Source of the DNA: Ranitomeya imitator
Taxonomy: Eukaryota
Direction: 5' to 3'
NCBI RefSeq assembly: GCF_032444005.1
Contig: NC_091285.1
Location: 313,844,001-313,908,000 of the forward strand
DNA: 64,000 nucleotides
Positions within the stretch are counted from its first letter, which is position 1; each line of letters opens with the position of its first letter. The notes beneath the pieces were generated by a model that saw nothing but the letters and a program-made list of their open reading frames with translations, was not told the origin of the DNA and made no database searches. Position numbers and translations under genes: made by a program. Of the stretch, positions 14,367 through 52,534 are shown piece after piece.

Positions 14367-15020
14367 TAGCACTGGCTGCAGCTAGATATAAGCATTGGAC
14401 GAAGCAGCACTGCACAGCTCCATTCAGTTCAAATGGACAGGACCTGATCTGCAGCACCTGGCAGCGGCAGCTGCACTTTGAACAGAGCTGACCAGTGTAG
14501 CTCCATTCAGTACTTTCATCTAGCCGCCGCCAGCGCCCATAGCAGGTGAGCGGTGTGGGTGGCAGGTATTGGATCTCCTCCGATCTGACACAGATGACCA
14601 GTCCTAAGGATAGGTGATCAATTTAATATGACTGGACAACCATAGGTTTGAAACACTAAACATACAAATATCGATTATAAAGGAGGTATACCTTAACATT
14701 ATTTTATTATTTAGTGCCAACCTATTCCAGAAGACTGTACAGAGACTGTCATCAGTTACATTAATCCATATGGGCTTACAATCTAAACTAAGAATAAAAC
14801 TACAGTATTAATATATTCTTTTTCCTTTGGAGTGTGCACAGGCAAGCATGGGGAGCACATAGAAACTCCAGGCAGATCTTGTCCTTGCTCAGCACTGCAA
14901 GGCAGCAGTATTTTACTAAGGAATATGCCATGCTGCACTGTTTTAAAGGCAGGTTGGGAGAATTTTCAAAAGTTGCAATAGCATAAAGGATGTTATATAA
15001 TCAAGAAAAAACCTTCACAT

Positions 15021-15596
15021 TGTAATAAACTTAGTGCTAAGTGCAGTGGAGATCAGTATCATGGGTCAGAAAAGAGGCCGAGAGTCAATAGGTTAAGAGT
15101 TCAAGAATATTTATAATGATATGCAGGTAAACAGCTATGACACAGCAGGTTAGTAGCAGACAGAGCTGGATAGGCAGTAAGCACGTGTACAGACCGTGGA
15201 AGTCCAAGTATGTGAGATCCAGAGACCTGGAGACCAGGCTAGGCCTCCTAGCAGGGAGCAGTCCAGCAGCAGAGACGGGTGCAGAGCGGATCCAGGGAAA
15301 CAAGTCTTTGCAATGAAGAGATGTAGAACCGGAGACAGATGGGGTATCCCAAAGTAACGAAGAAACCAGCAAGATAGCAGTTCTTCCAGCTTGATCACAA
15401 GTCAGGAACAAGATACTCAAGCAATGAGTATATATTCAGAGCTCCCTTAAATACACCACAGACAGGAACATGGAAAATCTGACAGGAAACAAGATGGCCC
15501 CCGTGAGGCCAATGACTCCATCTTAGGTAAGGGCAAAAGTAACTGAACTGAGGGCAAACAGCAACTAGAAACAGATATACAGTCCAAGTCCTTACA
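15021..15596 (-). repeat. 3' LTR of element A
   Basis: Direct repeat of 20082-20657 (offset 5061). Confidence 0.97.
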
Positions 15597-18467
15597 TTAC
15601 TCCCTTCTTAAAAAACGTCCTCTGGACGATCTCAAGTCTGGCTTATTGGGGTATCTGCTGTGAAACATTCTGATCAGATGGGGAGCATGGATGTTCTCCA
15701 GAGGTTCCCAGGAATTTTCTTCAGTCGAGTATCCCTGCCATTTCACCAGATACTGAAGACGTCTCCTATGAATCCGTGAATCCAAGATTTTCTCCACGAC
15801 GAATTCCTCTTGCCCGTCAATGAGGACTGGATCAGGAGGAGCAGAGGTGCGTCCGGGAAAAGAATTAGGCACTGCTGGTTTAAGCAGGGAAACATGGAAA
15901 ACAGGATGAATTCTTAGAGAGTTAGGCAACTTGAGTCGACAGGCTACAGGACTCACAATACCGCTGATCTTATATGGGCCAACATATTTTTGCCCCAACT
16001 TGGAAGTCGGAATTCTGAGTTTCAAGTTTTTTGTTGAGAGCCAGACCATGTCTCCTACCTTGTATGTTGGTGCTGGCTTACGGAATCTGTCTGCTGCCTT
16101 TTTAAATCTTTCCTGTGCTGAAACTAAAGTATTCTTTAGAACGTCCAAATTTTGCTGTAAAGATGCAATGCGGTCAGCAACCGCAGGCACAGACATGTCT
16201 ATGGGGAGTCGAGGGAGAATACTGGGATGATATCCCTTGTTAGCAAAGAACGGAGATAATTTGGTTGAAGCATTCTGAGAGTTGTTATACGTGAACTCAG
16301 CCAATGGCAGTAGACTCACCCAATCGTCTTGAAGATGACACACGTAGCAACGCAGATACTGCTCCAAAGTTTGGTTGGTTCGCTCTGTTTGGCCGTTAGA
16401 CTGTGGATGAAAAGCAGATGATAATTTTACTTTGATGTCCAGAGCAGCACAGAAGCTTTGCCAGAACCGTGAGGTGAATTGAACCCCACGATCAGATATT
16501 ACTTCATCCGGAGCTCCGTGTAAACGAAAAACATTTTGCACAACAAGATCCGCTGTTTGCTTAGCTGTTGGGACACCAGCACAGGGAATAAAATGAGCAG
16601 CTTTAGTCAACCGGTCAACTACTACAAGAATCGTGGTTTTTCCCTGTGACAAAGGCAACTCCACAATAAAATCCATTGAAATAGAGCCCCAGGGACGGGA
16701 TGGAACAGGCAGAGGTTGCAACAGTCCAGTAGGTGAAGAACGAGGAACTTTTGACTTGGCACATACCTCACATGATGAGACATACCGAAGAACATCTTTC
16801 CGAAAAGTCGGCCACCAGAAAAAACGAGACAGAAATTCCTGAGTCTTCTGAACTCCCCTATGACCGGCAACCTTAGAGTCATGCATTAATTTCAACACAC
16901 TCAGTTTTACTGTTTCTGGGATATACAAACGCTGTCCTTGAAACCAAAGTCCATTCTTGAAAGTCAGATTTACCTGAGTGGGTGGCTGACTCAAAAGCGA
17001 ATCTGCAGCATAAGCTTCCTTAATCTCAGTTAGAAGATCCTGATTATGCAAGACGCTTACAAAGTTTTTCTCAGATAGAATGGTCCTTGAAGATGAAGCT
17101 GAAATTGCTTCATCTGAATGAATCCTGGATAGTGCATCAGCCTTCTTATTACGCGAGCCCGGCCTATAGGAAATGACAAAATCAAATTGATTAAGAAAGA
17201 GATTCCACCGAGCCTGTCTAGGTTTCAGACATCTTGCCGACCTCATGAATTCAAGATTCCGATGATCCGTGAGTATAACAATCTGTTGGGATGCTCCTTG
17301 TAACAGATGTCTCCATTCCTTAAATGCGGTTATGATGGCTAACAGTTCCTTATTGCCAACGTCATAATTCCTTTCTGCGGGTGACAATTTTTGCGAGAGA
17401 AAGGCACACGGATGCAAGAGATCTTTCTCACCTGTTCTTTGCGAAAGTATGGCCCCTACAGCACAGTCCGAGGCATCCACTTCCACTATGAAGGCCTTGT
17501 CTGGATCAGGGTGGACAAGAATGGGAGCTGTCGTAAATCTAGATTTCAACGTAGAAAATGCTGTTTGAGCTTGAGGAGACCAGACGAATGGCGTCTTCTT
17601 CTGGGTTAACTGAGTGATGGGTGCAACGATCGCTGAAAAATTTTTAATAAAGCGTCTGTAAAAATTGGCGAATCCGATGAATCGCTGTACTTCCTTCACC
17701 GACTTAGGAGTTGGCCACTCCTGAATGGCTTGGGTCTTGCTTGCATCCATACTGAGACCCTGGGGAGAAATAACATATCCCAAGAATTGAATTTCTGTTT
17801 TGTGAAACTCACATTTCTCCAGTTTGATGTATAAGTGATTCTGCCGTAGACGATCCAAAACCATTTTCACGTGTCGCTGGTGGTACTCGATATTGCTGGA
17901 AAAAATCAAAATGTCATCCAAATAAATCACAACAAAAATATCGAGTATATCCCTGAAAACATCATTCGCCAAATGCTGGAATGTAGCCGGTGCGTTACGA
18001 AGGCCGAAAGACATAACGAGATACTCGAAATGCCCATAACGTGACCGAAACGCCGTTTTCCACTCATCGCCAGGACGAATCCGTACTAGATTGTACGCTC
18101 CACGAAGATCCAATTTTGTGAAGATTTTGGCATGTCGCACTCTCTCAAGTAATTCGGGAATTAGTGGAAGTGGATAAGAGTTTCTGATTGTGATTTTGTT
18201 GAGCTCCCGGTAATCAATGCATGGTCGGAGTGAGCCATCTTTCTTTTTGACAAAGAAGATTGGAGCACCTGCTGGGGAGGAAGATGGTCGTATAAACCCC
18301 TTAGCTAGGTTTTCATCTATGTATTCCTTGAGAGCTTTTAATTCTGGCCCAGACAATGGATAAATACTCCCGAAAGGAATCGCGGCACCAGGCAATAATT
18401 CCACGGGACAGTCATAAGGCCGATGTGGCGGTAATTTATCCGCATTTTTTTTTGTCACACACATCAC
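15597..18467 (-). CDS. Element A pol: reverse transcriptase, RNase H, integrase, chromodomain
   Basis: LPPHRPYDC, RT VIYLDDILIFS, RNase H DASD, HHCC zinc finger, integrase SMDF/SDRG/GQTER, C-terminal chromodomain EFVVEKILDSR...YLVKWQGY; the stop codon abuts the 3' LTR. Confidence 0.95.
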   Translation of the reverse strand: MMCVTKKNADKLPPHRPYDCPVELLPGAAIPFGSIYPLSGPELKALKEYIDENLAKGFIRPSSSPAGAPIFFVKKKDGSLRPCIDYRELNKITIRNSYPLPLIPELLERVRHAKIFTKLDLRGAYNLVRIRPGDEWKTAFRSRYGHFEYLVMSFGLRNAPATFQHLANDVFRDILDIFVVIYLDDILIFSSNIEYHQRHVKMVLDRLRQNHLYIKLEKCEFHKTEIQFLGYVISPQGLSMDASKTQAIQEWPTPKSVKEVQRFIGFANFYRRFIKNFSAIVAPITQLTQKKTPFVWSPQAQTAFSTLKSRFTTAPILVHPDPDKAFIVEVDASDCAVGAILSQRTGEKDLLHPCAFLSQKLSPAERNYDVGNKELLAIITAFKEWRHLLQGASQQIVILTDHRNLEFMRSARCLKPRQARWNLFLNQFDFVISYRPGSRNKKADALSRIHSDEAISASSSRTILSEKNFVSVLHNQDLLTEIKEAYAADSLLSQPPTQVNLTFKNGLWFQGQRLYIPETVKLSVLKLMHDSKVAGHRGVQKTQEFLSRFFWWPTFRKDVLRYVSSCEVCAKSKVPRSSPTGLLQPLPVPSRPWGSISMDFIVELPLSQGKTTILVVVDRLTKAAHFIPCAGVPTAKQTADLVVQNVFRLHGAPDEVISDRGVQFTSRFWQSFCAALDIKVKLSSAFHPQSNGQTERTNQTLEQYLRCYVCHLQDDWVSLLPLAEFTYNNSQNASTKLSPFFANKGYHPSILPRLPIDMSVPAVADRIASLQQNLDVLKNTLVSAQERFKKAADRFRKPAPTYKVGDMVWLSTKNLKLRIPTSKLGQKYVGPYKISGIVSPVACRLKLPNSLRIHPVFHVSLLKPAVPNSFPGRTSAPPDPVLIDGQEEFVVEKILDSRIHRRRLQYLVKWQGYSTEENSWEPLENIHAPHLIRMFHSRYPNKPDLRSSRGRFLRRE

Positions 18468-20057
18468 TAAAATCCCGATACTCTACCGGCAATGTCGAGT
18501 CGACCGTGACTGCAGTCTTCACTGGAGCCAGCTCTCCAGACAATGCTGATTCATTTGGAAACTGTAATTCTTTTGTTGTCCAATTGATAGTCGGATTTCG
18601 CAGCCGCAACCAAGGCAAACCTAAAATAATAGGAAAATTGGGAGAAGAAATCAACAAAAAGGACATATTTTCAGAATGATCCGCGCCCATACGGATCTTT
18701 AATGGGACTGTTTCAAGTTTCACAGGCCCAGAAATTAGTGGAGACCCGTCCACGGTTTCCATAAACACCGGAGAGTCTCTTTTTCGTGAGCGAATGCCAT
18801 GTTTTTCAGCAAAAGAGATGTCCATAAGATTGCTGCAAGCTCCAGAATCTATCATGGCGGAGCAGGTGATCCAGCAGGAACACACCTGAATTTTGATGGA
18901 AATGCAACAGAGCGAATCCCTCCTCGCTGTGGTAGAACTAACGGAAAGTAAAGCTATGTCCACAGGTGATGATGTTACTGATGAGTCATCAGGAAAATCA
19001 AAGTTTTCAGCAGATATTTCCTGTCTGTGCGGAAGAGAACACACTGAAGATAAATCCGAAAAATCAAGTCCAGTTACCGCAGCTGCGGACTTGCGATTTT
19101 TCCCGGGGCACTCTGAAATATAATGACCCGATTTACCGCAGTAAAAACATAAATTCTCTTTAAAGCGATATTCTTTACGTGCATCGATGGGTTTCCTCCG
19201 TACTGCGTCAATCTGCATAGGTTCCAGCTCTGTCTGAGATAAAGTCTTAGTCAGCGTTTCCTTGGTGGATGGAAAAGGCATAAAGTTATTACGATTAGCA
19301 TCGGCCCATTTTTCTTGGCGACGTTCGGTAAGACGAATATCAATCCGAATGCAATGATGTATAAAGTCAGCCAAGTTAGTAGGTGATTCACCTCGAGCTA
19401 GTTCATCTTTGATGGAAGCAGATAAACCTCTCCTGAACACTGCATATTTCGCTGAATCGCACCATGTTGTATCCAGCACCCATTTCCGAAACTCCATTGC
19501 GTATTCCACAACAGGACGCTTCCCCTGACGTAGTGTCAGTAATGCGGTTTCAGCTGTGATACTCCGATTAGGGTCATCAAACATCTGACACATTGCTGCA
19601 GTAAAGTCTTTCAGGGAATTCAAGCACACATCATTAGTCTCAATCAGTGGATTAGCCCAGGCTAATGCTTTGTTTGTTAGCAACATAATTATAGTCAATA
19701 CTTTATCCCGATCAGTTGCAAACTGGGCTGCACGTGCAGAGAAATACAGCTGACATTGATTCAAAAACCCCCGAAATTTCTCTCACCACCAAACCTGAAT
19801 GGTGGGAGTTTAGGAAAAGCTGGACCAGGAGCCGGGATTGGAGCAGATACCATGTTTGCAGCTGTAATCTCCACATTTGAAAGTCGAGACGCTAAGGCCT
19901 GAATAGACGTATCAGCTACATTCGCATTGTGATTAGTTTGCGATTCTAATGTCCCAAGTTTAGTTTTTATAGCCTGCAGCTCCACATGAAGTCCAGAGAC
20001 AAATGAGCAAAGTTTTTTCATTCGCACCTCCATAGAATCTGACCCAGAGATCTCCAT
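18436..20057 (-). pseudogene. Element A gag-protease, split by a frameshift (19761-20057 and 18436-19764)
   Basis: Gag motifs NQCQLYF and CFYCGKSGHYISEC zinc knuckle, protease MIDSGA; reading-frame breaks near 19775 and at the A9 run near 18445-18453. Confidence 0.88.
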
Positions 20058-20081
20058 TTTTTTTTTTGGGCTTGAGTATTA

Positions 20082-20657
20082 TGTAATAAACTTAGTGCTA
20101 AGTGCAGTGGAGATCAGTATCATGGGTCAGAAAAGAGGCCGAGAGTCAATAGGTTAAGAGTTCAAGAATATTTATAATGATATGCAGGTAAACAGCTATG
20201 ACACAGCAGGTTAGTAGCAGACAGAGCTGGATAGGCAGTAAGCACGTGTACAGACCGTGGAAGTCCAAGTATGTGAGATCCAGAGACCTGGAGACCAGGC
20301 TAGGCCTCCTAGCAGGGAGCAGTCCAGCAGCAGAGACGGGTGCAGAGCGGATCCAGGGAAACAAGTCTTTGCAATGAAGAGATGTAGAACCGGAGACAGA
20401 TGGGGTATCCCAAAGTAACGAAGAAACCAGCAAGATAGCAGTTCTTCCAGCTTGATCACAAGTCAGGAACAAGATACTCAAGCAATGAGTATATATTCAG
20501 AGCTCCCTTAAATACACCACAGACAGGAACATGGAAAATCTGACAGGAAACAAGATGGCCCCCGTGAGGCCAATGACTCCATCTTAGGTAAGGGCAAAAG
20601 TAACTGAACTGAGGGCAAACAGCAACTAGAAACAGATATACAGTCCAAGTCCTTACA
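20082..20657 (-). repeat. 5' LTR of element A
   Basis: Direct repeat of 15021-15596; TATTTAA on the minus strand at 20514-20508. Confidence 0.97.
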
Positions 20658-21714
20658 CACATATTCTTTGACCTTCCCCCAACACTCCATCCCTGTCACT
20701 TGGGTGGTGCCCGCTGGTGTAGCAGTGATGATGGTTAAGCAAATTCTTATCACTACTTCACCTCTGAGGCCAGTGATTAGCTGCAGCGTTCACGTGAATG
20801 ATTGACATCATCAGTGTAGGATAGATGTGGACCAGTGGAGTGTTGGTGCCTGAGCGGCAGGTTATTTATGGGGAAAGTAATGACTATTTCTACATTTACA
20901 ACATTCTCAGCTCTTTTGCAACTTTGGAAACATCTTGGAAAGCCTCTTTAAATGTTAGACGATGTTCAAAATATTTCCCAGTTATTGTGGCTCACTTCTA
21001 AGCCAAATTTCCGTTACAATATTGATGAATGTCAGAAACATTTTGAAAAGAAACAGTAGTTTCATTGTTTTTATGATTGGAGGTAGAGTTAAGTCCACTG
21101 AGTTCAACCTATATCCTAATATAAAACCAATAAATATCCTAATATGTTGATCCAGAGGAAGGCAAAAAGCCTGTGGGCTGACACTAATATTAGGGTAAAT
21201 ATTCATTCCCAAGCAATTATTAACTTTGCGATAGAAAATAATGTGGAGCGGTAAAACAGGACAGATGGAAGAACAATGGGCAAGGCTGTCATCATAAGGC
21301 TGTGTGTGCTGGTGTAAACCCGGAGGAAAGGTATGGTCCTGTTTAATCTTCACCATTCCATCTCATCTGTTATATGTACACAAAACAATAATTACCGTAA
21401 TGAAATCACATGACGTGCTCATAAATGAGTCTTTTAATTGAAACATGTTGTACAATTGAGCTGTAAAGTTAGAAGCCTCTTCCTCATCATGCCGGGAATC
21501 AAACTTTTTAACCTGAACTTGAGAATGTACAACAAAGAATATGAGTGTATTGATTTGTTAACCAGGGGCGTAGCTATGGTATTCTGGGGTGGGATTAGCT
21601 GCAGTATCTAAATGAAAGGCTAGGAAAGCAAACAGAATCATTGTTGCGCAAATGAAAATCTTGCCATGTTGGACCATCAATGTGTTGTAATTGAGATATT
21701 GCTGATGATTAAGG

Positions 21715-22985: not shown

Positions 22986-23555
22986 CAGTTGTGCTCAAAA
23001 GTTTACATACCCGGGCAGAATTTTTGTTTTCTTGGCCTTTTTTCAGAGAATATGAATGATAACACCCAAACTTTTTCTCCACTCATGGTTAGGGGTGAAG
23101 CCATTTATTGTCAAGCTACTGTGTTTTCTCTTTATAAATCATAATGACAACCCAAAACATCCAAATGACCCTGATCAAAAGTTCACATACCTCATTTCTT
23201 AATACTGTGTATTGCCCCCTCTAACATCAATGACAACTTGAAGCCTTTTGTGGTAGTTGTGGATGAGGTTCTTTATTTTCTCAGATGGTAAAGCTGCCCA
23301 CTCTTCTTGGCAAAAGCCTCCAGTTCCTGTAAATTCATGGGCTGTCTAGCATGAACTGCGCTCTTGAGATATCCCCAGAGTGGCTCAATGATATTGAGGT
23401 CAGGAGACTGAGATGGCCACTCCAGAACCTTCACTTTGTTCTGCTGTAGCCAATGACAGGTCAACTTGGCCTTGTGTTTTGGATCATTGTCATGTTGAAC
23501 GTCCAAGTACGTCCCATGCACAGCTTCCGGGTTGATGAGTGGAAATTTGCCTCCA
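22986..23555 (-). mobile_element. Truncated Tc1 element (one end plus transposase C-terminus)
   Basis: TA|cagttgtgctcaaaagtttacatacc terminus; minus-strand peptide [11 protein letters not shown]...[15 protein letters not shown]; breaks off at a tandem repeat. Confidence 0.85.
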
Positions 23556-23944
23556 GTGTGCATGGCTTCCCAGTTCCTGTCCTGGTGTGCATGGCTTCCC
23601 AGTCCCTGTCCTGGTGTGCATGGCTCCCCAGTCCCTGTCCTGGTTTGCATGGTTCCCCAGTCCCTGTCCTGGTGTGCATGGCTCCCCAGTCCCTGTCCTG
23701 GTGTGGATGGCTTCTCAGTCCCTGTCCTGATGTGTATGGCTTACCAGTCCCTGTCCTGGTGTGGATGGCTCTCCAGTCCCTGTCCTGGTGTGCATGGCTT
23801 CCCAATCCCTGTCCTGGTGTGCATGGCTCCCCAGTCCCTGTCCTGATGTGCATGGATTTCCAGTCCCTGTCCTGGTGTGCATGGCTTCCCAGTCCCTGTT
23901 CTGGTGTGCATGGCTACCCAGTCCCTGTCCTGGTGTGCATGGCT
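23556..23944. repeat. 29-bp minisatellite, about 13 copies
   Basis: Unit gtgcatggcttcccagtccctgtcctggt in head-to-tail copies. Confidence 0.92.
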
Positions 23945-24508
23945 CATTATTCCTATGTATGATTCCTGATAAAAAAAAAAACATTTTATGTACCTGCCTG
24001 CGCTCCCTTGGTGGCACTGCATCTTGTTCCGGCTTCCAGCAGCTCTTCCTGCTGAGCGCATATGTGGCTCCGCTTATTAAGGTAATGAATATGCGTGCCA
24101 CGGCTATTGGAGTGGAGAGGCATGCATATTCATTACCTTAATGAACGGTGCCACGTCATCGCTCGGCAGGAAGAGATGCGGGCGCTGGCGGCCGGAACGA
24201 GATGCAGTGCCAGCACCGTGGGTGCGCTGGTAGGTGAGTATGAGTGCTGGAAGCCGGCACTGTGCGCTATTGCAGCAGCAGCACAGGCTTTAGCCGTCTC
24301 CTGCCTGTGTGACCCGCTGCTCCGCCGCTCCCCCTCCTCCGCTGGCTTTCTGGGATTGTGACTCGTGTATAAGCCGAGGGGGCGTTTTCAGCACAAAAAA
24401 ACGTGGCTGACACTCAAGGTGGCACATGACAGCAAGTATGCAAAGTGCCTCCTCGTGGTTACGTGATAACTGCTTGAACTGGCAGAGTCCGGCCATGTAT
24501 ATATTATA

Positions 24509-25871
24509 CTAGATGGTGGCCCGATTCTAACGCATCGGGTATTCTAGAATATTCATGTCCACGTAGTATATTGCACAGCCCACGTAGTATATTGCCCAGT
24601 CACGTAGTATATTGCCCAGCCACGTAGTATATTGCCCAGCCACGTAGTATATTGCCCAGCCATGTAGTATATTGCCCAGTCACATAGTATATTGTCCAGC
24701 TACATAGTATATTGCCCAGTCACGTAGTATACAGCACAGAGCCACGTAGTATACAACACAGACACATAGTATATTGCCCAGCCACGTAGTATATTGTCCA
24801 GCCACATAGTATATTGCCCAGCCACATAGTATACAGCACAGAGCCACGTAGTATACAGCACAGACACGTAGTATATTGCCCAGTCACATAGTATATTGCC
24901 CAGCCACATAGTATATTGCCCAGCCACATAGTATATTGCCCAGCCACATAGTATATTGTCCCGCCACATAGTATACAGCACAGAGCCACGTAGTATACAG
25001 CACAGACACGTAGTATATTGCCAAGCGACGTAGTATATTGCCCAGTCACGTAGTATATTGCCCAGCCACATAGTATATTGCCCAGCCACGTAGTATATTG
25101 CCCAACCACGTAGTATATTGCCCAGCCACGCAGTATATTGCCCAACCACATAGTATATTGCCCAGTCACGTAGTATACAGCACAGAGCCACGTAGTATAC
25201 TGCCCAGTCACGTAGTATATTGGCCAGTCACGTAGTATGCACCATATCCCATACTCACCTTCCGGAGCGGATCGAAGTGGCCGGTTACCGATGCTCATCG
25301 CGCGCTCTGGTCTGAAGAGTGCATTGCGGTCTCGCGAGATGATGACGTAGCGGTCTCGTGTGACCGTACATCATCATCTTGCGAGATCGCAATGCATGGA
25401 GCGGTCACTGGGGCGTCGTGAGGAGCATCGGTAACCGGGCGCTTCGATTCGGGGGCTCCAGAAGGTGAGTATGTAACTATTTTTTATTTTTTTATTATTT
25501 TTAACATTAGATCTTTTTACTATTCATGCTGCGTAGGCAGCATGAATAGTAAAAAGTTGGTCACACAGGGTTAATAGCAGTGTTAATCGAGTGCGATACA
25601 CCGTGGTCAACGCTGCCATTAACCCTGTGTGAGCGCTGATCGGAGGGGAGTACGGAGCGGGCACTGACTGCGGGGAGGAAGGAGCGGCCATTTGTCCGCC
25701 GGACTGTGCCATTGCTGATTGGTCGCGGCAGCCATGACAGGCAGCTGGCACGACCAATCAGTGACTTGGATTCCATGACGGACAGAGGCCGCGACCAATG
25801 AATATCCGTGACAGACAGAAAGACAGAAGGACAGAACGACGGAAGTAACCCTTAGACAATTATATAGTAGA
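24509..25871 (-). mobile_element. Non-autonomous Helitron carrying a tandem array
   Basis: Minus strand reads A|TCTACTATATA ... cccgat-gcgttaga-atcggg hairpin, 7 nt, CTAG|T: canonical 5' TC, 3' hairpin plus CTAG, A-T target and no TSD. Confidence 0.85.
24560..25240. repeat. 20-bp minisatellite with longer variant units inside the Helitron
   Basis: Unit cacgtagtatattgcccagc, interspersed with cacgtagtatacagcacagagc. Confidence 0.92.
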
Positions 25872-45696: not shown

Positions 45697-46507
45697 TGTT
45701 ATGAAAGGTAATTCAGTACCAAAATGGACATAGAGGTCAGCGCACATACAGTGACCTGGCAATAACCCAAAAAACAAGAACGAGCTCTGAGACGTGGGAA
45801 CTCTGTTGACCGCAATCCCTAATCCTCTCCAATCACACTAAAGGCAGCCCTGGATTGCGCCTAACGCTCCCTATGCAACTCGGCACGGCCTGAGAAACTA
45901 GCTAGCCTGAAGATAGAAAATAAGCCTACCTTGCCTCAGAGAAATACCCCAAAGGAAAAGGCAGCCCCCACATATAATGACTGTGAGTTAAGATGAAAAG
46001 ACAAACGTAGAGATGAAATAGATTTAGCAAAGTGAGGCCCAACTTTCTGAACAGAGCGAGGATAGGAAAGGTAACTTTGCGGTCAACACAAAACCCTACA
46101 AAAACCACGCAGAGGGGGCAAAAAGACCCTCCGTACCGAACTAACGGCACGGAGGTAAACCATCTGCGTCCCAGAGCTTCCAGCAAGCAGAAAAAAACAA
46201 ATCGACAAGCTGGACAGAAAAAAACAGCAAACAAATAGCAAAGAGGAACTTAGCTATGCAGAGCAGCAGGCCACAGGAACGATCCAGGAGGAAACAGGTC
46301 CAATACTAGGACATTGACTGGAGGCCAGGATAAAAGCACTAGGTGGAGTTAAATAGAGCAGCACCTAACGACTTCACCACATCACCTGAGGAAGGAAACT
46401 CAGAAGCCGCAGTACCACTTTCCTCCACCAACGGAAGCTCACAGAGAGAACCAGCCGAAGTACCCCTTGTGACCACAGAAGGGAGCTCTGCCACAGAATT
46501 CACAACA
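45697..46507 (-). repeat. 3' LTR of element B
   Basis: tgttatgaaagg...gaattcacaaca; direct repeat of the interrupted right LTR. Confidence 0.96.
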
Positions 46508-49500
46508 GTACCCCCCCCTTGAGGAGGGGTCACCGAACCCTCACCAGAGCTCCCAGGATGACCAGGATGAGCCATATGAAAGGCACGAACAAGATCGGGA
46601 GCATGGACATCAGAGGCAAAGACCCAGGAATTATCTTCCTGAGCATAACCCTTCCACTTAACCAGATACTGGAGTTTCCGCCTTGAAACACGAGAATCCA
46701 AAATCTTCTCCACAATGTACTCCAACTCCCCCTCCACCAAAACCGGGGCAGGAGGATCAACAGATGGAACCATAGGTGCCACGTATCTCCGCAACAATGA
46801 CCTATGGAATACGTTATGTATGGAAAAAGAATCTGGAATGGTCAGACGAAAAGACACAGGATTAAGAACCTCAGAAATCCTATACGGACCAATAAAACGA
46901 GGTTTAAACTTAGGAGAGGAAACCTTCATAGGAATATGACGAGAAGATAACCAAACCAAGTCCCCAACCCGAAGTCGGGGACCCACACAGCGTCTGCGAT
47001 TAGCGAAACGTTGAGCCTTCTCCTGGGACAAAGTCAAATTGTCCACTACATGAGTCCAAATCTGCTGCAACCTGTCCACCACAGTATCCACACCAGGACA
47101 GTCCGAAGACTCAACCTGCCCTGAAGAGAAACGAGGATGGAACCCAGAGTTGCAGAAAAACGGTGAAACCAAGCTAGCCGAGCTGGCCCGATTATTAAGG
47201 GCGAACTCAGCCAAAGGCAAAAAGGACACCCAGTCATCCTGATCAGCAGAAACACAGCATCTCAGATATGTTTCCAAGGTCTGATTGGTCTGGCCATTAG
47301 TCTGAGGATGGAAAGCCGAGGAAAAAGACAAGTCAATGCCCATCCTACCACAAAAGGCTCGCCAAAATCTTGAAACAAACTGGGAACCTCTGTCAGAAAC
47401 AATATTCTCAGGAATGCCATGCAAACGAACCACATGCTGGAAGAACAAAGGCACCAAATCAGAGGAGGAAGGCAATTTAACCAAGGGCACCAGATGGACC
47501 ATTTTAGAAAAGCGATCACAGACCACCCAAATGACTGACATCTTTTGGGAGACGGGAAGATCTGAAATAAAATCCATAGAGATATGTGTCCAAGGCCTCT
47601 TAGGGACCGGCAAGGGCAAAAGCAACCCACTGGCACGAGAACAGCAGGGCTTAGCCCGAGCACAAATCCCACAGGACTGCACAAAAGTACGCACATCCCG
47701 CGACAGAGATGGCCACCAAAAGGATCTAGCCACTAACTCTCTGGTACCAAAGATTCCTGGATGACCAGCCAACACCGAACAATGAACCTCAGAGATAACT
47801 TTATTCGTCCACCTATCAGAGACAAACAGTTTCTCCGCTGGGCAACGATCAGGTTTATTAGCCTGAAATTTTTGCAGCACCCGCCGCAAATCAGGGGAGA
47901 TGGCAGACACAATTACTCCCTCTTTGAGGATACCCGCCGGCTCAGATACACCCGGAGAGTCGGGCACAAAACTCCTAGACAGAGCATCCGCCTTCACATT
48001 TTTAGAGCCCGGAAGGTATGAAATCACAAAGTCAAAACGGGTAAAAAACAACGACCAACGAGCTTGTCTAGGATTCAACCGCTTGGCGGACTCGAGATAA
48101 GTCAAGTTCTTATGATCAGTCAAGACCACCACGCGATGCTTAGCTCCTTCAAGCCAATGACGCCACTCCTCGAATGCCCACTTCATGGCCAGCAACTCTC
48201 GATTGCCCACATCATAATTTCGCTCAGCAGGCGAAAACTTCCTGGAAAAGAAGGCGCATGGTTTCATCACCGAGCAATCAGAACTTCTCTGCGACAAAAC
48301 AGCCCCTGCTCCAATCTCAGAAGCATCAACCTCGACCTGGAACGGAAGCGAAACATCTGGTTGACACAACACAGGGGCAGAAGAAAAACGACGCTTCAAC
48401 TCTTGAAAAGCTTCCACTGCAGCAGAAGACCAATTGACCAAATCAGCACCTTTCTTGGTCAAGTCGGTCAATGGTTTAGCAATACTAGAAAAATTGCAGA
48501 TGAAGCGACGATAAAAATTAGCAAAGCCCAGGAACTTTTGCAGACTTTTCAGAGATGTCGGCTGAGTCCAATTATGGATGGCTTGGACCTTAACAGGGTC
48601 CATCTCGATAGTAGAAGGGGAAAAGATGAACCCCAAAAATGAAACCTTCTGAACACCAAAGAGACACTTTGATCCCTTCACAAACAAAGAATTAGCACGC
48701 AGGACCTGAAACACCGTTCTGACCTGCTTCACATGAGACTCCCAATCATCCGAGAAGATCAAAATGTCATCTAAGTACACAATCAGGAATTTATCCAGGT
48801 ACTCTCGGAAGATGTCATGCATAAAGGACTGAAACACTGATGGAGCATTGGCAAGTCCGAATGGCATTACTAGATACTCAAAATGGCCCTCGGGCGTATT
48901 AAATGCAGTTTTCCACTCATCGCCTCGCTTAATACGCACAAGATTATACGCACCACGAAGATCTATCTTGGTGAACCAACTAGCCCCCTTAATCCGAGCA
49001 AACAAATCAGATAACAATGGCAAGGGGTACTGAAATTTAACCGTGATCTTATTTAGAAGGCGGTAATCTATACAAGGTCTCAGTGAACCATCCTTCTTGG
49101 CTACAAAAAAGAACCCTGCTCCTAATGGCGACGATGACGGGCGAATATGCCCCTTCTCCAAAGACTCCTTCACATAACTCCGCATAGCGGCGTGCTCAGG
49201 CACAGATAAATTAAACAGTCGACCTTTTGGGAATTTACTACCAGGAATCAAATCGATAGCACAATCACAATCCCTATGCGGAGGTAGGGTATCGGACTTG
49301 GGCTCATCAAATAAATCCCGGTAATCAGACAAGAACTCTGGAACCTCAGAAGGGGTGGATGACGAAATAGTCAGAAATGGGACATCACCATGTACCCCCT
49401 GACAACCCCAGCTGGACACAGACATGGATTTCCAATCTAATACTGGATTATGGACTTGTAGCCATGGCAACCCCAACACGACCACATCATGCAGATTATG

Positions 49501-50673
49501 CAACACCAGAAAGCGAATAACCTCCTGATGTGCAGGAGCCATGCACATGGTCAGCTGGGTCCAGTACTGAGGCTTATTCTTGGCCAAAGGCGTAGCATCA
49601 ATTCCTCTCAATGGAATAGGATACTGCAAGGGCTCCAAGAAAAAACCACAGCGCCTAGCAAACTCCAAGTCCATCAAATTCAGGGCAGCGCCTGAATCCA
49701 CAAATGCCATAACAGAATAGGATGACAAAGAGCAGATCAGAGTAACGGACAAAAGAAATTTCGACTGTACCGTACCAATGGTGGCAGACCTAACGAAACG
49801 CTTAGTGCGCTTAGAACAATCGGAGATAGCATGAGTGGAATCACCACAGTAAAAACACAGCCCATTCTGACGTCTGTGTTCTTGCCGTTCAGCTCTGGTC
49901 AAAGTCCTATCGCACTGCATAGGCTCAGGTTTAAGCTCAGGTAATACCGCCAAATGGTGCACAGATTTACGCTCGCGCAAGCGTCGACCGATCTGAATGG
50001 CCAAAGACATAGACTCATTCAGACCAGCAGGCATAGGAAATCCCACCATGACATCCTTAAGGGCTTCAGAGAGACCTTTTCTGAAAATAGCTGCGAGCGC
50101 ACCTTCATTCCACTGAGTGAGTACGGACCACTTTCTAAATTTCTGACAATATACCTCTATTTCATCCTGACCCTGACACAGAGCCAGCAAATTCTTCTCT
50201 GCCTGATCCACAGAATTAGGCTCATCGTACAGCAATCCGAGCGCCAGGAAAAATGCATCGATATTACTTAATGCAGGATCTCCTGACGCAAGAGAAAATG
50301 CCCAGTCCTGAGGGTCGCCACGCAAAAAAGAAATAACGATCCTAACTTGTTGAACTGGGTCACCAGAGGAGCGAGGTTTCAAAGCCAGAAATAGTTTACA
50401 ATTATTTTTGAAACTCAGAAATTTAGTTCTATCTCCAAAAAACAAATCAGGAATAGGAATTCTCGGTTCTAACATAGAATTCTGAACCACAAAGTCTTGA
50501 ATACTTTGTACTCTTGCCGTGAGCTGATCCACACATGAAGACAGACCTTTAATGTCCATTGCTACACCTGTGTCCTGAACCACCCAAATGTCTAGGGGGA
50601 AAAAAAGGCAAAACACAGTGCAAAGAAAAAAAAATGGTCTCAGAACTTCTTTTTTCCCTCTATTGGGAATCAT
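46339..50673 (-). CDS. Element B gag-pol polyprotein (1444 aa as called; likely start Met39 at 50559)
   Basis: CFYCGDSTHAISDC knuckle, FVDSGA protease, IVYLDD RT, DASE RNase H, HHCC, integrase core, chromodomain EYIVEKILDSR...YLVKWKGY; runs into the 3' LTR. The integrase catalytic Glu is deleted (see findings). Confidence 0.93.
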   Translation of the reverse strand: MIPNRGKKEVLRPFFFLCTVFCLFFPLDIWVVQDTGVAMDIKGLSSCVDQLTARVQSIQDFVVQNSMLEPRIPIPDLFFGDRTKFLSFKNNCKLFLALKPRSSGDPVQQVRIVISFLRGDPQDWAFSLASGDPALSNIDAFFLALGLLYDEPNSVDQAEKNLLALCQGQDEIEVYCQKFRKWSVLTQWNEGALAAIFRKGLSEALKDVMVGFPMPAGLNESMSLAIQIGRRLRERKSVHHLAVLPELKPEPMQCDRTLTRAERQEHRRQNGLCFYCGDSTHAISDCSKRTKRFVRSATIGTVQSKFLLSVTLICSLSSYSVMAFVDSGAALNLMDLEFARRCGFFLEPLQYPIPLRGIDATPLAKNKPQYWTQLTMCMAPAHQEVIRFLVLHNLHDVVVLGLPWLQVHNPVLDWKSMSVSSWGCQGVHGDVPFLTISSSTPSEVPEFLSDYRDLFDEPKSDTLPPHRDCDCAIDLIPGSKFPKGRLFNLSVPEHAAMRSYVKESLEKGHIRPSSSPLGAGFFFVAKKDGSLRPCIDYRLLNKITVKFQYPLPLLSDLFARIKGASWFTKIDLRGAYNLVRIKRGDEWKTAFNTPEGHFEYLVMPFGLANAPSVFQSFMHDIFREYLDKFLIVYLDDILIFSDDWESHVKQVRTVFQVLRANSLFVKGSKCLFGVQKVSFLGFIFSPSTIEMDPVKVQAIHNWTQPTSLKSLQKFLGFANFYRRFICNFSSIAKPLTDLTKKGADLVNWSSAAVEAFQELKRRFSSAPVLCQPDVSLPFQVEVDASEIGAGAVLSQRSSDCSVMKPCAFFSRKFSPAERNYDVGNRELLAMKWAFEEWRHWLEGAKHRVVVLTDHKNLTYLESAKRLNPRQARWSLFFTRFDFVISYLPGSKNVKADALSRSFVPDSPGVSEPAGILKEGVIVSAISPDLRRVLQKFQANKPDRCPAEKLFVSDRWTNKVISEVHCSVLAGHPGIFGTRELVARSFWWPSLSRDVRTFVQSCGICARAKPCCSRASGLLLPLPVPKRPWTHISMDFISDLPVSQKMSVIWVVCDRFSKMVHLVPLVKLPSSSDLVPLFFQHVVRLHGIPENIVSDRGSQFVSRFWRAFCGRMGIDLSFSSAFHPQTNGQTNQTLETYLRCCVSADQDDWVSFLPLAEFALNNRASSASLVSPFFCNSGFHPRFSSGQVESSDCPGVDTVVDRLQQIWTHVVDNLTLSQEKAQRFANRRRCVGPRLRVGDLVWLSSRHIPMKVSSPKFKPRFIGPYRISEVLNPVSFRLTIPDSFSIHNVFHRSLLRRYVAPMVPSVDPPAPVLVEGELEYIVEKILDSRVSRRKLQYLVKWKGYAQEDNSWVFASDVHAPDLVRAFHMAHPGHPGSSGEGSVTPPQGGGTVVNSVAELPSVVTRGTSAGSLCELPLVEESGTAASEFPSSGDVVKSLGAALFNST

Positions 50674-50695
50674 TAGTACTTTAGGCCTCCAGTAC

Positions 50696-52534
50696 TGTTA
50701 TGAAAGGTAATTCAGTACCACAATGGACATAGAGGTCAGCGCTAGGGTTGAGCGACCTTTACTTTTATAGGATCGGGTCGGGTTTCACGAAACCCGACTT
50801 TTGAAAAAGTCGGGTCGAGTGAAATCGGCCGATCCTATAAAAAAGTAGGGGTCGGGGTCGGACGAAACCCGAAACCCAATGCAGTGCATTGGGTTTCCAT
50901 GGTTCCCAGGGTCTGAAGGAGCGGAAACTCTCCTTCAGGCCCTGTGATCCATATTTTAGTGTAAAATAAAGAATTAAGATAAAAAATATCGCAATACTTA
51001 CCCTCTGACGCGCCCTGGTACTAACTGGGAACCTTCCTTCCTTAGAATCAGCCTTCCAGGACCTTGCGGTGACGTCGCGGCTTGTGATTGGCCGCGCGGC
51101 CGCCCATGTGACCGCTCGCGCGGCCAATCACAAGCCGCGACGTCACCGAAGGTCCTGGAAGGGCTGATTCTTAGGAAGGAAGGCTGCCGGAAAGAAGCAG
51201 GGCGCGTCCGAGGGTGAGTATATACCTAATAGGAATATACTCACCCTCGGACGCGCCCTGCTTCTTTCCTATTCCTATTAGGTATATACTCACCCTCGGA
51301 CGCGCCCTGCTTCTTTCCGGCAGCCTTCCTTCCTAAGAATCAGCCCTTCCAGGAACTTCGGTGATGTCGCGGGTGACGTCGCGGCTTGTGATTGGCCGCG
51401 CGAGCGGTCACATGGGCGGCCGCGCGGCCAATCACAAGCCGCGACGTCACCGCGACGTCACCGCAGGGTCCTGGAAGGCTGATTCTAAGGAAGGAAGGTT
51501 CCCGGTTAGTACCAGGGCGCGTCAGAGGGTAAGTATTGCGATATTTTTTATTTTAATTCTTTATTTTACACTTAAATCTGAATTCCGATACCAATTCCCG
51601 ATATCTTAAACATATCGGGAATCGGTATCGGAATTCCGATTCTAGATTCAAAAGATCGCCGACTTCATGGCCGACCCCACACTGGGGTCGGGTTTCATGA
51701 AACCCGACCTTGCCAAAAGTCGGCGACTTTTGAAAAATTTCGACCCGTTTCGCTCAACCCTAGTCAGCGCACATACAGTGACCTGGCAATAACCCAAAAA
51801 ACAAGAACGAGCTCTGAGACGTGGGAACTCTGTTGACCGCAATCCCTAATCCTCTCCAACCACACTAAAGGCAGCCGTGGATTGCGCCTAACGCTCCCTA
51901 TGCAACTTGGCATGGCCTGAGAAACTAGCTAGCCTGAAGATAGAAAATAAGCCTACCTTGCCTCAGAGAAATACCCCAAAGGAAAAGGCAGCCCCCACAT
52001 ATAATGACTGTGAGTTAAGATGAAAAGACAAACGTAGAGATGAAATAGATTTAGCAAAGTGAGGCCCAACTTTCTGAACAGAGCGAGGATAGGAAAGGTA
52101 ACTTTGCGGTCAACACAAAACCCTACAAAAACCACGCAGAGGGGGCAAAAAGACCCTCCGTACCGAACTAACGGCACGGAGGTAAACCATCTGCGTCCCA
52201 GAGCTTCCAGCAAGCAGAAAAAAACAAATTGACAAGCTGGACAGAAAAAAACAGCAAACAAATAGCAAAGAGGAACTTAGCTATGCAGAGCAGCAGGCCA
52301 CAGGAACGATCCAGGAGGAAACAGGTCCAATACTAGAACATTGACTGGAGGCCAGGATAAAAGCACTAGGTGGAGTTAAATAGAGCAGCACCTAACGACT
52401 TCACCACATCACCTGAGGAAGGAAACTCAGAAGCCGCAGTACCACTTTCCTCCACCAACGGAAGCTCACAGAGAGAACCAGCCGAAGTACCACTTGTGAC
52501 CACAGGAGGGAGCTCTGCCACAGAATTCACAACA
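50696..52534 (-). repeat. 5' LTR of element B, interrupted by a hAT MITE
   Basis: Matches the left LTR once 50743-51770 is removed. Confidence 0.95.
50743..51762. mobile_element. hAT MITE inserted in the LTR
   Basis: TIR TAGGGTTGAGCGA / TCGCTCAACCCTA; exact 8-bp TSD GTCAGCGC (single copy in the intact LTR). Confidence 0.95.

What the first reader, a model, noticed from the sequence alone, without database searches (positions are those of the whole stretch)
20068..20514. Retrotransposon A appears to self-prime: its PBS is complementary to its own transcript start, not to a tRNA
Seen: after the 5' LTR the minus strand reads TA-ATACTCAAGC (20079-20070), with no TGG to pair with a tRNA CCA end. 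The exact 10-nt complement GCTTGAGTAT lies inside the LTR (20483-20474), 25 nt downstream of a TATTTAA box (20514-20508), i.e. where the transcript should begin. Established: fission yeast Tf1 primes from its own mRNA 5' end, and this mechanism has been proposed for vertebrate Tf1/sushi-group elements. Inference: this very young frog element uses tRNA-independent priming.
Basis: partly seen in the sequence, partly recalled or inferred. Interest (0 to 1): 0.75.

Follow-up and report, generated by a model that had tools for sequence, protein, structure and literature searches.

The report
Self-priming frog LTR retrotransposon
A recently inserted frog jumping gene carries, at the spot where DNA copying must start, a 10-base match to the predicted start of its own RNA, so it most likely primes its own copying as its yeast and fish relatives are already thought to do; a sound but ordinary case.

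Summary
Element A (15021-20657, minus strand) is a 5.6-kb Ty3/gypsy chromovirus with identical 576-bp LTRs and a 5-bp target duplication. Two bases after the LTR's terminal CA lies ATACTCAAGC (20079-20070). Its exact complement (20483-20474) starts 31 nt after a TATTTAA box, at a pyrimidine-purine step. The 24-nt leader has no TGG.

Comparison supports function:
- Element B in the same window (49% pol identity) has the same layout with a different 10-mer.
- About 15 relatives from metagenome contigs also show CA + 2 nt + a 9-12-nt site whose complement sits 29-34 nt after a TATA box. Each family has its own sequence, with paired changes between close families.

Tf1-type self-priming is therefore well supported. 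It is already described as common to the Tf1/sushi group, vertebrates included, so this is a new member of a known kind.

Host tRNAs could not be searched. As assembled, A has two frame breaks. A possibly new detail is a copy of the site's sequence just upstream of the predicted start, forming a hairpin in three lineages.

The scan had already noted element B here and a self-priming by-product on another piece of this genome.

The parts
15021..20657 (-). Element A: complete LTR retrotransposon, 5637 bp (LTR, PBS, gag-PR-RT-RH-IN-chromodomain, PPT, LTR)
   Evidence: Direct repeat at a 5061-bp offset. Pfam domains: Retrotrans_gag, zf-CCHC, aspartyl protease, RVT_1, RT_RNaseH, Integrase_H2C2, rve, SH3_Tf2-1, Chromo.
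20082..20657 (-). 5' LTR, 576 bp, TG...CA
   Evidence: 100% identical to 15021-15596. Contigs from other runs break or switch flank exactly at 20082 and 20657.
15021..15596 (-). 3' LTR, 576 bp
20658..20662 (-). Target-site duplication ATGTG, upstream copy; the downstream copy is at 15016-15020
   Evidence: Read directly.
20508..20514 (-). TATTTAA box, first T 31 nt upstream of the self-primer motif
   Evidence: Family copies in four other runs read TATATAA here (position 20511).
20486..20492 (-). U3 arm ATACTCA, identical to the first 7 nt of the PBS. It forms a 7-bp hairpin (5-nt loop) with motif bases 4-10 and straddles the predicted start.
   Evidence: dG -6.7 kcal/mol. Stronger analogous arms occur in L037 and in the L055 group.
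20474..20483 (-). Predicted self-primer GCTTGAGTAT, the first 10 nt of R (3' LTR copy at 15413-15422)
   Evidence: Exact complement of the PBS. Starts at a T|G pyrimidine-purine step. Unchanged in diverged family contigs while flanking bases vary.
20080..20081 (-). 2-nt spacer TA between the LTR's terminal CA and the PBS
   Evidence: The same 2-nt spacing is seen in B and in all relatives with the geometry. It reads GA in two diverged copies.
20070..20079 (-). Primer-binding site ATACTCAAGC
   Evidence: Unchanged in diverged family contigs, while the adjacent A-run varies by 4-5 nt.
20055..20057 (-). gag start codon, 24 nt after the LTR
19764..19782 (-). First frame break, inside gag
   Evidence: The single-ORF relative P0001 aligns to A in three frame pieces; three-frame translation.
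18442..18452 (-). Second frame break, at the protease/RT junction within an A-run
15600..15609 (-). Polypurine tract AAGAAGGGAG, followed by the pol stop codon TAA and then the 3' LTR
   Evidence: Read directly.
45697..52534 (-). Element B: second chromovirus with 49% pol identity to A and a 1452-aa gag-pol ORF. LTRs are about 811 bp and about 99% identical; the 5' LTR is interrupted.
52376..52382 (-). Element B TATTTAA box, 29 nt upstream of its motif
52344..52353 (-). Element B predicted self-primer GGCCTCCAGT (3' LTR copy at 46317-46326)
50684..50693 (-). Element B PBS ACTGGAGGCC, 2 nt (GT) after the LTR's terminal CA

Best explanation
Element A is a vertebrate chromovirus (Ty3/gypsy, Tf1/sushi-type, like the frog 'Amn-san' elements) that starts reverse transcription with its own RNA instead of a tRNA.

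Inferred sequence of events:
1. Pol II starts at about G20483, 31 nt after the TATTTAA box.
2. The first 10 nt of the transcript (GCUUGAGUAU) fold back over about 400 nt of R-U5 and pair with AUACUCAAGC, which begins 2 nt after the LTR.
3. The element's RNase H cuts after the paired stretch, by analogy with Tf1's cut between bases 11 and 12.
4. The freed 3'-OH primes minus-strand DNA through the 2-nt spacer, U5 and R.
5. The plus strand later copies the attached primer. The PBS is therefore re-made from the transcript's own 5' end in each cycle, which keeps the two sequences complementary within a family while they drift between families.

Shown here: the sequences, their exact positions, their conservation and co-variation, and the predicted fold.

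Inferred: the transcript start, the cleavage and the priming itself.
For: - **Exact complement.** The 10-nt complement is present, and the window holds only the three expected copies.
- **Chance.** P about 0.005 for a random 21-nt window.
- **PBS position.** It starts exactly 2 nt after CA, as in B and all relatives showing the geometry.
- **Promoter geometry.** The motif starts 29-34 nt after a TATA box in 9 of 11 elements. It starts at a pyrimidine-purine step in 16 of 17, against 25% expected.
- **Constrained scan of 80 loci.** 18 hits against 2 in a plain-reverse control; without the TATA condition, 103 against 107.
- **Frequency.** 8 of 21 elements with full LTR pairs have an exact complement of 10 nt or more.
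- **Co-variation.** A has GCTTGAGTAT and B has GGCCTCCAGT. Close families show paired changes: ATCGAGTTCT / ATTGAGTTCT / AACGAGTTCT, and AGTCTGTAAAT / AGTCTGAAAT / AGTCTGATAAT. In each, the PBS changes to match.
- **Conservation within family A.** Motif and PBS are invariant in diverged copies from four runs, while the neighbouring bases, the spacer and the A-run vary.
- **Fold.** The minimum-energy fold of RNA 20483-20040 contains the 10-bp duplex, with pair probability about 0.49.
- **No tRNA-type site.** There is no TGG in the leader, no tRNA gene in the window and no Rfam match.
- **Domains.** The architecture includes SH3_Tf2-1 and a chromodomain.
- **Literature.** Self-priming is described as a common feature of Tf1/sushi elements, vertebrates included (PMC10085805, PMC6317226, PMC4600332, PMC7175516). 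[quoted passage not shown]
Against: - No transcript start was mapped. All available runs were contigs and none was on record as RNA.
- The two flanking duplexes of the Tf1 'pretzel' structure are not better than shuffles in A (z -1.2 and -0.3).
- The duplex is 10 bp and AU-rich (-13 kcal/mol), and closes a loop of about 400 nt.
- Host tRNAs and tRNA fragments could not be compared with the PBS.
- No canonical AATAAA was found to delimit R.
- This copy has two frame breaks, so it may depend on proteins from other copies, or the assembly may be wrong at homopolymer runs.
Confidence: 0.8

Rival explanations
1. The pairing is real, but the primer is not the capped 5' end of the same RNA. It would instead be the motif copy in the 3' R, a read-through transcript, or the partner RNA in a packaged dimer (priming in trans).
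For: Every genomic RNA carries a second motif copy in its 3' R (15422-15413). An unchecked note from another piece of this genome (s1-274983) describes an LTR-PBS-inverted-U3 product, which would need a motif with U3 still attached to pair at a PBS.
Against: The motif start coincides with TATA+30 and a pyrimidine-purine step in nearly all families. That coincidence is only expected if the 5' end itself matters. In three lineages a U3 arm would mask the U3-linked copy.
Confidence: 0.08
2. The complementarity serves another purpose, such as cyclising the 5' leader for packaging, dimerisation or translation control. Priming would use an unidentified host RNA, for example a tRNA fragment or an internal tRNA region.
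For: Host tRNAs could not be searched. Half-tRNA and internal-tRNA primers exist in other LTR elements (PMC6317226).
Against: The site begins exactly 2 nt after CA in every family, which is where a primer must end. A host primer predicts a few shared PBS sequences, yet each family has its own, matched to its own LTR.
Confidence: 0.07
3. The 10-nt match in element A is a chance match with no function.
For: A permissive shuffle that included the A-run gave P = 0.03. The duplex is short.
Against: The stricter null gives 0.005. The match also lands at TATA+31, at a pyrimidine-purine step and at CA+2. It is conserved in diverged copies and mirrored in B and many relatives.
Confidence: 0.03

Closest known systems
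Tf1 / Tf2 of Schizosaccharomyces pombe (with Tj1, Tosmo and Tcry elements)
   Same: Both are Ty3/gypsy chromoviruses with a chromodomain on the integrase. The PBS lies just after the 5' LTR and is complementary to the first bases of the element's own transcript. The LTR ends in CA before the PBS (PMC7175516, PMC10085805, PMC4600332). Relatives of A, and element B, have a single gag-pol ORF like Tf1.
   Different: The primer is 10 nt here against 11 in Tf1. R-U5 is about 400 nt, so the fold-back loop is much larger. The flanking 'pretzel' duplexes are not detectable above chance in A. The host is a vertebrate. Nothing has been tested experimentally.
sushi-ichi (Takifugu) and the vertebrate Tf1/sushi group (Butler et al. 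2001, as cited in PMC6317226, PMC10085805)
   Same: These are vertebrate chromoviruses for which self-priming and a pretzel-type fold were proposed from sequence. That is the same kind of evidence as here.
   Different: This is a distinct family in a poison-type frog; the nearest named hits are Ranitomeya, Xenopus and Leptobrachium proteins.
Amn-san-type elements of frogs (PMC4131045)
   Same: These are about 5-kb Ty3/gypsy elements and the only frog LTR elements with a chromodomain. They are the most abundant and most transcribed LTR elements in frogs, with very similar copies that imply recent activity. Element A fits this description.
   Different: That paper does not discuss the PBS or priming; a search of its text found no mention.
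tRNA-primed LTR retrotransposons and retroviruses (e.g. Ty3)
   Same: LTR ends, the 2-nt spacer, the PPT and the enzyme set are the same. Ty3 Gag-Pol is the best solved-structure match (7q5b, E 1e-149).
   Different: The PBS does not start with TGG and matches the element's own LTR instead of a tRNA 3' end.

Membership tests
Tf1/sushi group of chromoviruses (self-priming LTR retrotransposons) | Ty3/gypsy domain order (PR-RT-RH-IN) with a chromodomain at the integrase C-terminus | tested here: met
   Pfam finds RVT_1, RT_RNaseH, Integrase_H2C2, rve, SH3_Tf2-1 and Chromo in that order, with gag, zinc knuckle and protease upstream. Element B has the same order.
Tf1/sushi group of chromoviruses (self-priming LTR retrotransposons) | A PBS directly downstream of the 5' LTR that is complementary to a sequence in the element's own LTR rather than to a tRNA 3' end | tested here: met
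   The 10-nt exact complement begins 2 nt after CA, and the leader has no TGG. The internal-window null gives P = 0.005.
Tf1/sushi group of chromoviruses (self-priming LTR retrotransposons) | The complementary sequence is the very 5' end of the transcript | tested here: inconclusive
   This is predicted only. TATTTAA lies at -31 and the motif starts at a pyrimidine-purine step, a pattern shared by 9 of 11 and 16 of 17 relatives. No reads could map the start: the runs were contigs only and none was on record as RNA.
Tf1/sushi group of chromoviruses (self-priming LTR retrotransposons) | A three-duplex 'pretzel' RNA structure: a central primer-PBS duplex plus two duplexes between PBS-adjacent sequences and LTR sequence downstream of the primer (PMC10085805) | tested here: inconclusive
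   The central duplex is in the minimum-energy fold. The best flanking duplexes (-10.0 and -9.6 kcal/mol) are not better than shuffles (z -1.2 and -0.3).
Tf1/sushi group of chromoviruses (self-priming LTR retrotransposons) | RNase H cleavage of the RNA duplex, releasing the primer | not testable with these tools
   This needs biochemistry. An RNase H domain is present.
Tf1/sushi group of chromoviruses (self-priming LTR retrotransposons) | Phylogenetic placement of RT-RH-IN with Tf1, sushi-ichi and Amn-san reference sequences | not tested
   No reference sequences could be obtained. Indirect support: pol relatives at 38-54% identity carry the same priming geometry, and the literature equates vertebrate chromoviruses with this group (PMC6317226, PMC4131045).
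tRNA-primed LTR retroelements | A PBS within a few nt of the LTR that begins TGG and is complementary to the 3' end of a host tRNA | tested here: not met
   There is no TGG in the 24-nt leader. The first TGG is inside the gag start codon, 25 nt from the LTR. The host tRNA set was not available for a full comparison, and the window holds no tRNA gene.

The most novel reading that the evidence does not exclude
In three separate lineages a copy of the PBS-sense sequence sits in U3 just upstream of the predicted transcript start. The lineages are element A, locus L037, and the L055/L049/L071/L072 group. The copy forms a hairpin with the self-primer only where U3 is attached, that is, in the 3' end of the genomic RNA and in plus-strand strong-stop DNA.

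This could be an 'anti-primer' arm. It would mask the non-productive motif copy, so that only the U3-less 5' end can pair with the PBS. It would also suppress snap-back of plus-strand DNA onto its own R. I found no description of such an arm in the papers I could read.
Probability: 0.2. Interest if true: 0.55.

Novelty: new member of a known kind. Interest (0 to 1): 0.3.

Why it matters
This is a clean, very recent vertebrate example of tRNA-independent priming. Together with element B and the metagenome relatives, it gives a simple and specific sequence signature for annotating self-priming elements: CA, 2 nt, then a 9-12-nt site whose complement starts about 30 nt after a TATA box at a pyrimidine-purine step.

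Self-primed elements should escape host defences aimed at tRNA-type primer sites, such as the 3' tRNA fragments discussed in PMC7472051. That may bear on why chromoviruses are the most successful LTR elements in frogs. This last link is my inference and was not tested. The mechanism itself is not new.

Tried and rejected
- **Mapping the transcript start from public reads.** The look-up of sequencing runs gave 15 holders, none on record as RNA and all kept as contigs. Read laying therefore showed no starts or ends, only family variation and contig breaks at the LTR edges.
- **Fetching genomic context of frog, lizard and fish protein relatives.** Metagenome contigs were used instead.
- **Pretzel flanking duplexes.** Not above shuffles.
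- **Rfam on the element.** No match at E up to 1.
- **tRNA genes in the window.** None, so the host-tRNA refutation test could not be run.
- **The sigma-70 promoter and terminator scan.** This is a bacterial model and irrelevant here; disregarded.
- **Primary Tf1 papers and Butler et al. 2001.** Not held. Their content is taken from later open papers that cite them.
- **Poly(A) signal to delimit R.** No AATAAA or ATTAAA downstream of the motif, only TATAAA at 20176. The end of R is left undefined.

Full report
**1. What is there**

Element A occupies 15021-20657 on the minus strand.
- It has two 576-bp LTRs (20657-20082 and 15596-15021) that are identical at every base.
- The LTRs begin TG and end CA, and are flanked by a 5-bp duplication, ATGTG (20662-20658 and 20020... 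corrected: 15020-15016).
- Between the LTRs lie gag (Retrotrans_gag, CCHC knuckle), an aspartyl protease, RT, RNase H, integrase (zinc, core, SH3_Tf2-1) and a C-terminal chromodomain.
- The pol stop codon abuts the 3' LTR and is preceded by the purine tract AAGAAGGGAG.
- The best solved-structure match is Ty3 Gag-Pol.

This makes A a chromodomain-bearing Ty3/gypsy element, a chromovirus, of about 5.6 kb. It fits the 'Amn-san' type that one survey found to be the only chromodomain-bearing, and the most abundant and transcribed, LTR element in frogs (PMC4131045). The nearest named proteins are from frogs (Ranitomeya, Xenopus, Leptobrachium, Lithobates), then lizards and fish.

**2. The observation**

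Read on the minus strand, the LTR ends ...TTACA at 20082. Then come TA, ATACTCAAGC (20079-20070), CC, an A-run, and the gag ATG at 20057. The leader has no TGG.

The exact complement GCTTGAGTAT is at 20483-20474, LTR position 175. The window contains only this copy, its twin in the 3' LTR and the PBS itself, against 0.18 matches expected. TATTTAA lies at 20514-20508, so its first T is 31 nt before the motif. The pairing is exactly 10 nt.

As a null I took 300 random internal 21-nt windows from each of 21 related elements. A complement of 10 nt or more in the element's own LTR occurred with P = 0.005. A looser LTR shuffle gave 0.03 because the A-run inflates it.

**3. Does it look functional?**

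Four lines of evidence say yes.

(a) Position. The site starts 2 nt after the terminal CA. A minus-strand primer must end there for the finished DNA to carry the two extra bases that integrases trim; this is established retroelement biology.

(b) Promoter geometry. The complement starts 31 nt after a TATA box and at a T|G step.

(c) Family conservation. Contigs from four other runs (three coded organisms) carry diverged copies of this LTR and leader.
- The motif and the PBS are unchanged in them.
- Nearby bases vary: 20463, 20491/2, 20497, the spacer base 20081, and the A-run length.
- The box reads TATATAA in those copies.

(d) Fold. The minimum-energy structure of the predicted 5' RNA (20483-20040) closes with this 10-bp duplex, at pair probability about 0.49.

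**4. Independent replication and co-variation**

Element B (45697-52534, minus strand) shares only 49% pol identity with A. It has a 1452-aa gag-pol ORF with the same domains.

Its 5' LTR is split by a 1020-bp insertion. Once that is recognised, the LTR ends ...AACA. Then come GT and ACTGGAGGCC (50693-50684). The complement GGCCTCCAGT lies at LTR position 182 (52353-52344), 29 nt after another TATTTAA. The geometry is the same and the sequence is unrelated.

I then fetched 80 metagenome contigs encoding pol relatives at 37-54% identity.
- Among the 19 with full LTR pairs, plus A and B, 8 of 21 have an exact complement of 10 nt or more between the post-LTR window and the LTR.
- I ran a constrained scan requiring CA, 2 nt, then at least 9 nt whose reverse complement lies 40-1400 nt upstream with a TATA box at -37 to -22. 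It gave 18 hits against 2 for a plain-reverse control.
- Without the TATA condition the counts were 103 against 107. The specific signal is therefore the coincidence with the promoter.
- The motif starts at a pyrimidine-purine step in 16 of 17 cases.
- Each family has its own sequence, and close families show paired changes:
  - ATCGAGTTCT / ATTGAGTTCT / AACGAGTTCT, with PBS AGAACTCGAT / AGAACTCAAT / AGAACTCGTT.
  - AGTCTGTAAAT / AGTCTGAAAT / AGTCTGATAAT, with matching sites.
- The closest relative with a readable 5' end is L037 (54% identity). It has ACA, GT, TTGTTCACCTT and the complement 31 nt after TATAAAT.

A host primer would predict a few shared sites. Self-priming predicts exactly this family-specific matching, because the site is recopied from the primer in every cycle.

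**5. Comparison with what is known**

[quoted passage not shown] Self-priming is described as a common feature of the Tf1/sushi group, which includes vertebrate elements (PMC10085805, PMC6317226, PMC4600332, all citing Butler et al. 2001).

Tf1 also needs two flanking duplexes, the 'pretzel' (PMC10085805). In A the best candidates are no better than shuffles, so that feature is inconclusive. Placement on a tree with Tf1 and sushi-ichi was not possible, because no reference sequences could be loaded.

I therefore file A as working like, and very probably belonging to, the Tf1/sushi self-priming group. It is a new member of a known kind.

**6. What remains open**
- The transcript start is inferred.
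- Host tRNAs could not be compared with the PBS. The window has no tRNA gene.
- The end of R is undefined.
- As assembled, A is not coding-intact. A 77%-identical single-ORF relative aligns to A in three frame pieces, with breaks near 19782-19764 and 18452-18442, both at homopolymer runs. These may be real mutations or assembly errors.

**7. A possibly new detail**

In A, the 7 nt ATACTCA (20492-20486) just upstream of the predicted start repeat the PBS and form a hairpin with motif bases 4-10 (dG -6.7 kcal/mol).

Much stronger versions exist in L037 (11 bp, -17.6) and in L055/L049/L071/L072 (8-9 bp, about -11 to -12). These are as stable as the primer-PBS duplex. B and eight other families lack the arm. 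Cross-pairing motifs with other elements' upstream regions never reached 7 nt (0 of 104).

The arm lies in U3, so only the 3' end of the RNA and plus-strand strong-stop DNA would form the hairpin. It could mask the unproductive motif copy. This is a hypothesis only.

An unchecked note from another piece of this genome (s1-274983) describes an integrated LTR-PBS-inverted-U3 product. That is the kind of snap-back such an arm would oppose. I could not examine that DNA.

**8. Verdict**

Novelty is low and interest about 0.3.

Noticed in passing
window 19764-19782 and 18442-18452 (minus strand): Element A has two frame breaks at homopolymer runs despite identical LTRs. Single-ORF relatives such as P0001 (77% identical) and element B read straight through. 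The breaks are either real inactivating changes or assembly indel errors.
   Followed up: partly
window 50743-51762: A 1020-bp insertion lies inside U5 of element B's 5' LTR. It has 12-bp terminal inverted repeats (TAGGGTTGAGCG), an 8-bp target duplication (GTCAGCGC) and a largely palindromic interior (50947-51583 self-inverted at 88%). It looks like a hAT-type non-autonomous DNA transposon.
   Followed up: partly
window 20486-20492; loci L037, L055, L049, L071, L072 just upstream of their motifs: A PBS-sense copy in U3 immediately upstream of the predicted transcript start forms a hairpin with the self-primer. It is present in three lineages and absent in B and eight others.
   Followed up: partly
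window 23498-24040 and 24538-25307: Two tandem-repeat arrays, with periods of 29 nt and about 20 nt, lie a few kb from element A.
   Followed up: no
protein P0067: A protein annotated in the frog-killing chytrid Batrachochytrium dendrobatidis is 52% identical over 98% of A's pol. This is as close as many vertebrate hits. It could be an ordinary fungal Tf1/sushi member, contamination or transfer.
   Followed up: no
window 20057-20067 and 20511: Family copies in other runs have an A-run between the PBS and the gag ATG that is 4-5 nt shorter. They read TATATAA where this copy has TATTTAA.
   Followed up: no
loci L009, L013, L021: Three related contig elements share the leader ATAATCTTGATCTC but have only an 8-nt exact complement in the LTR (AAGATTAT, about 91 nt before the LTR end). 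This may be a shorter or imperfect self-primer.
   Followed up: no
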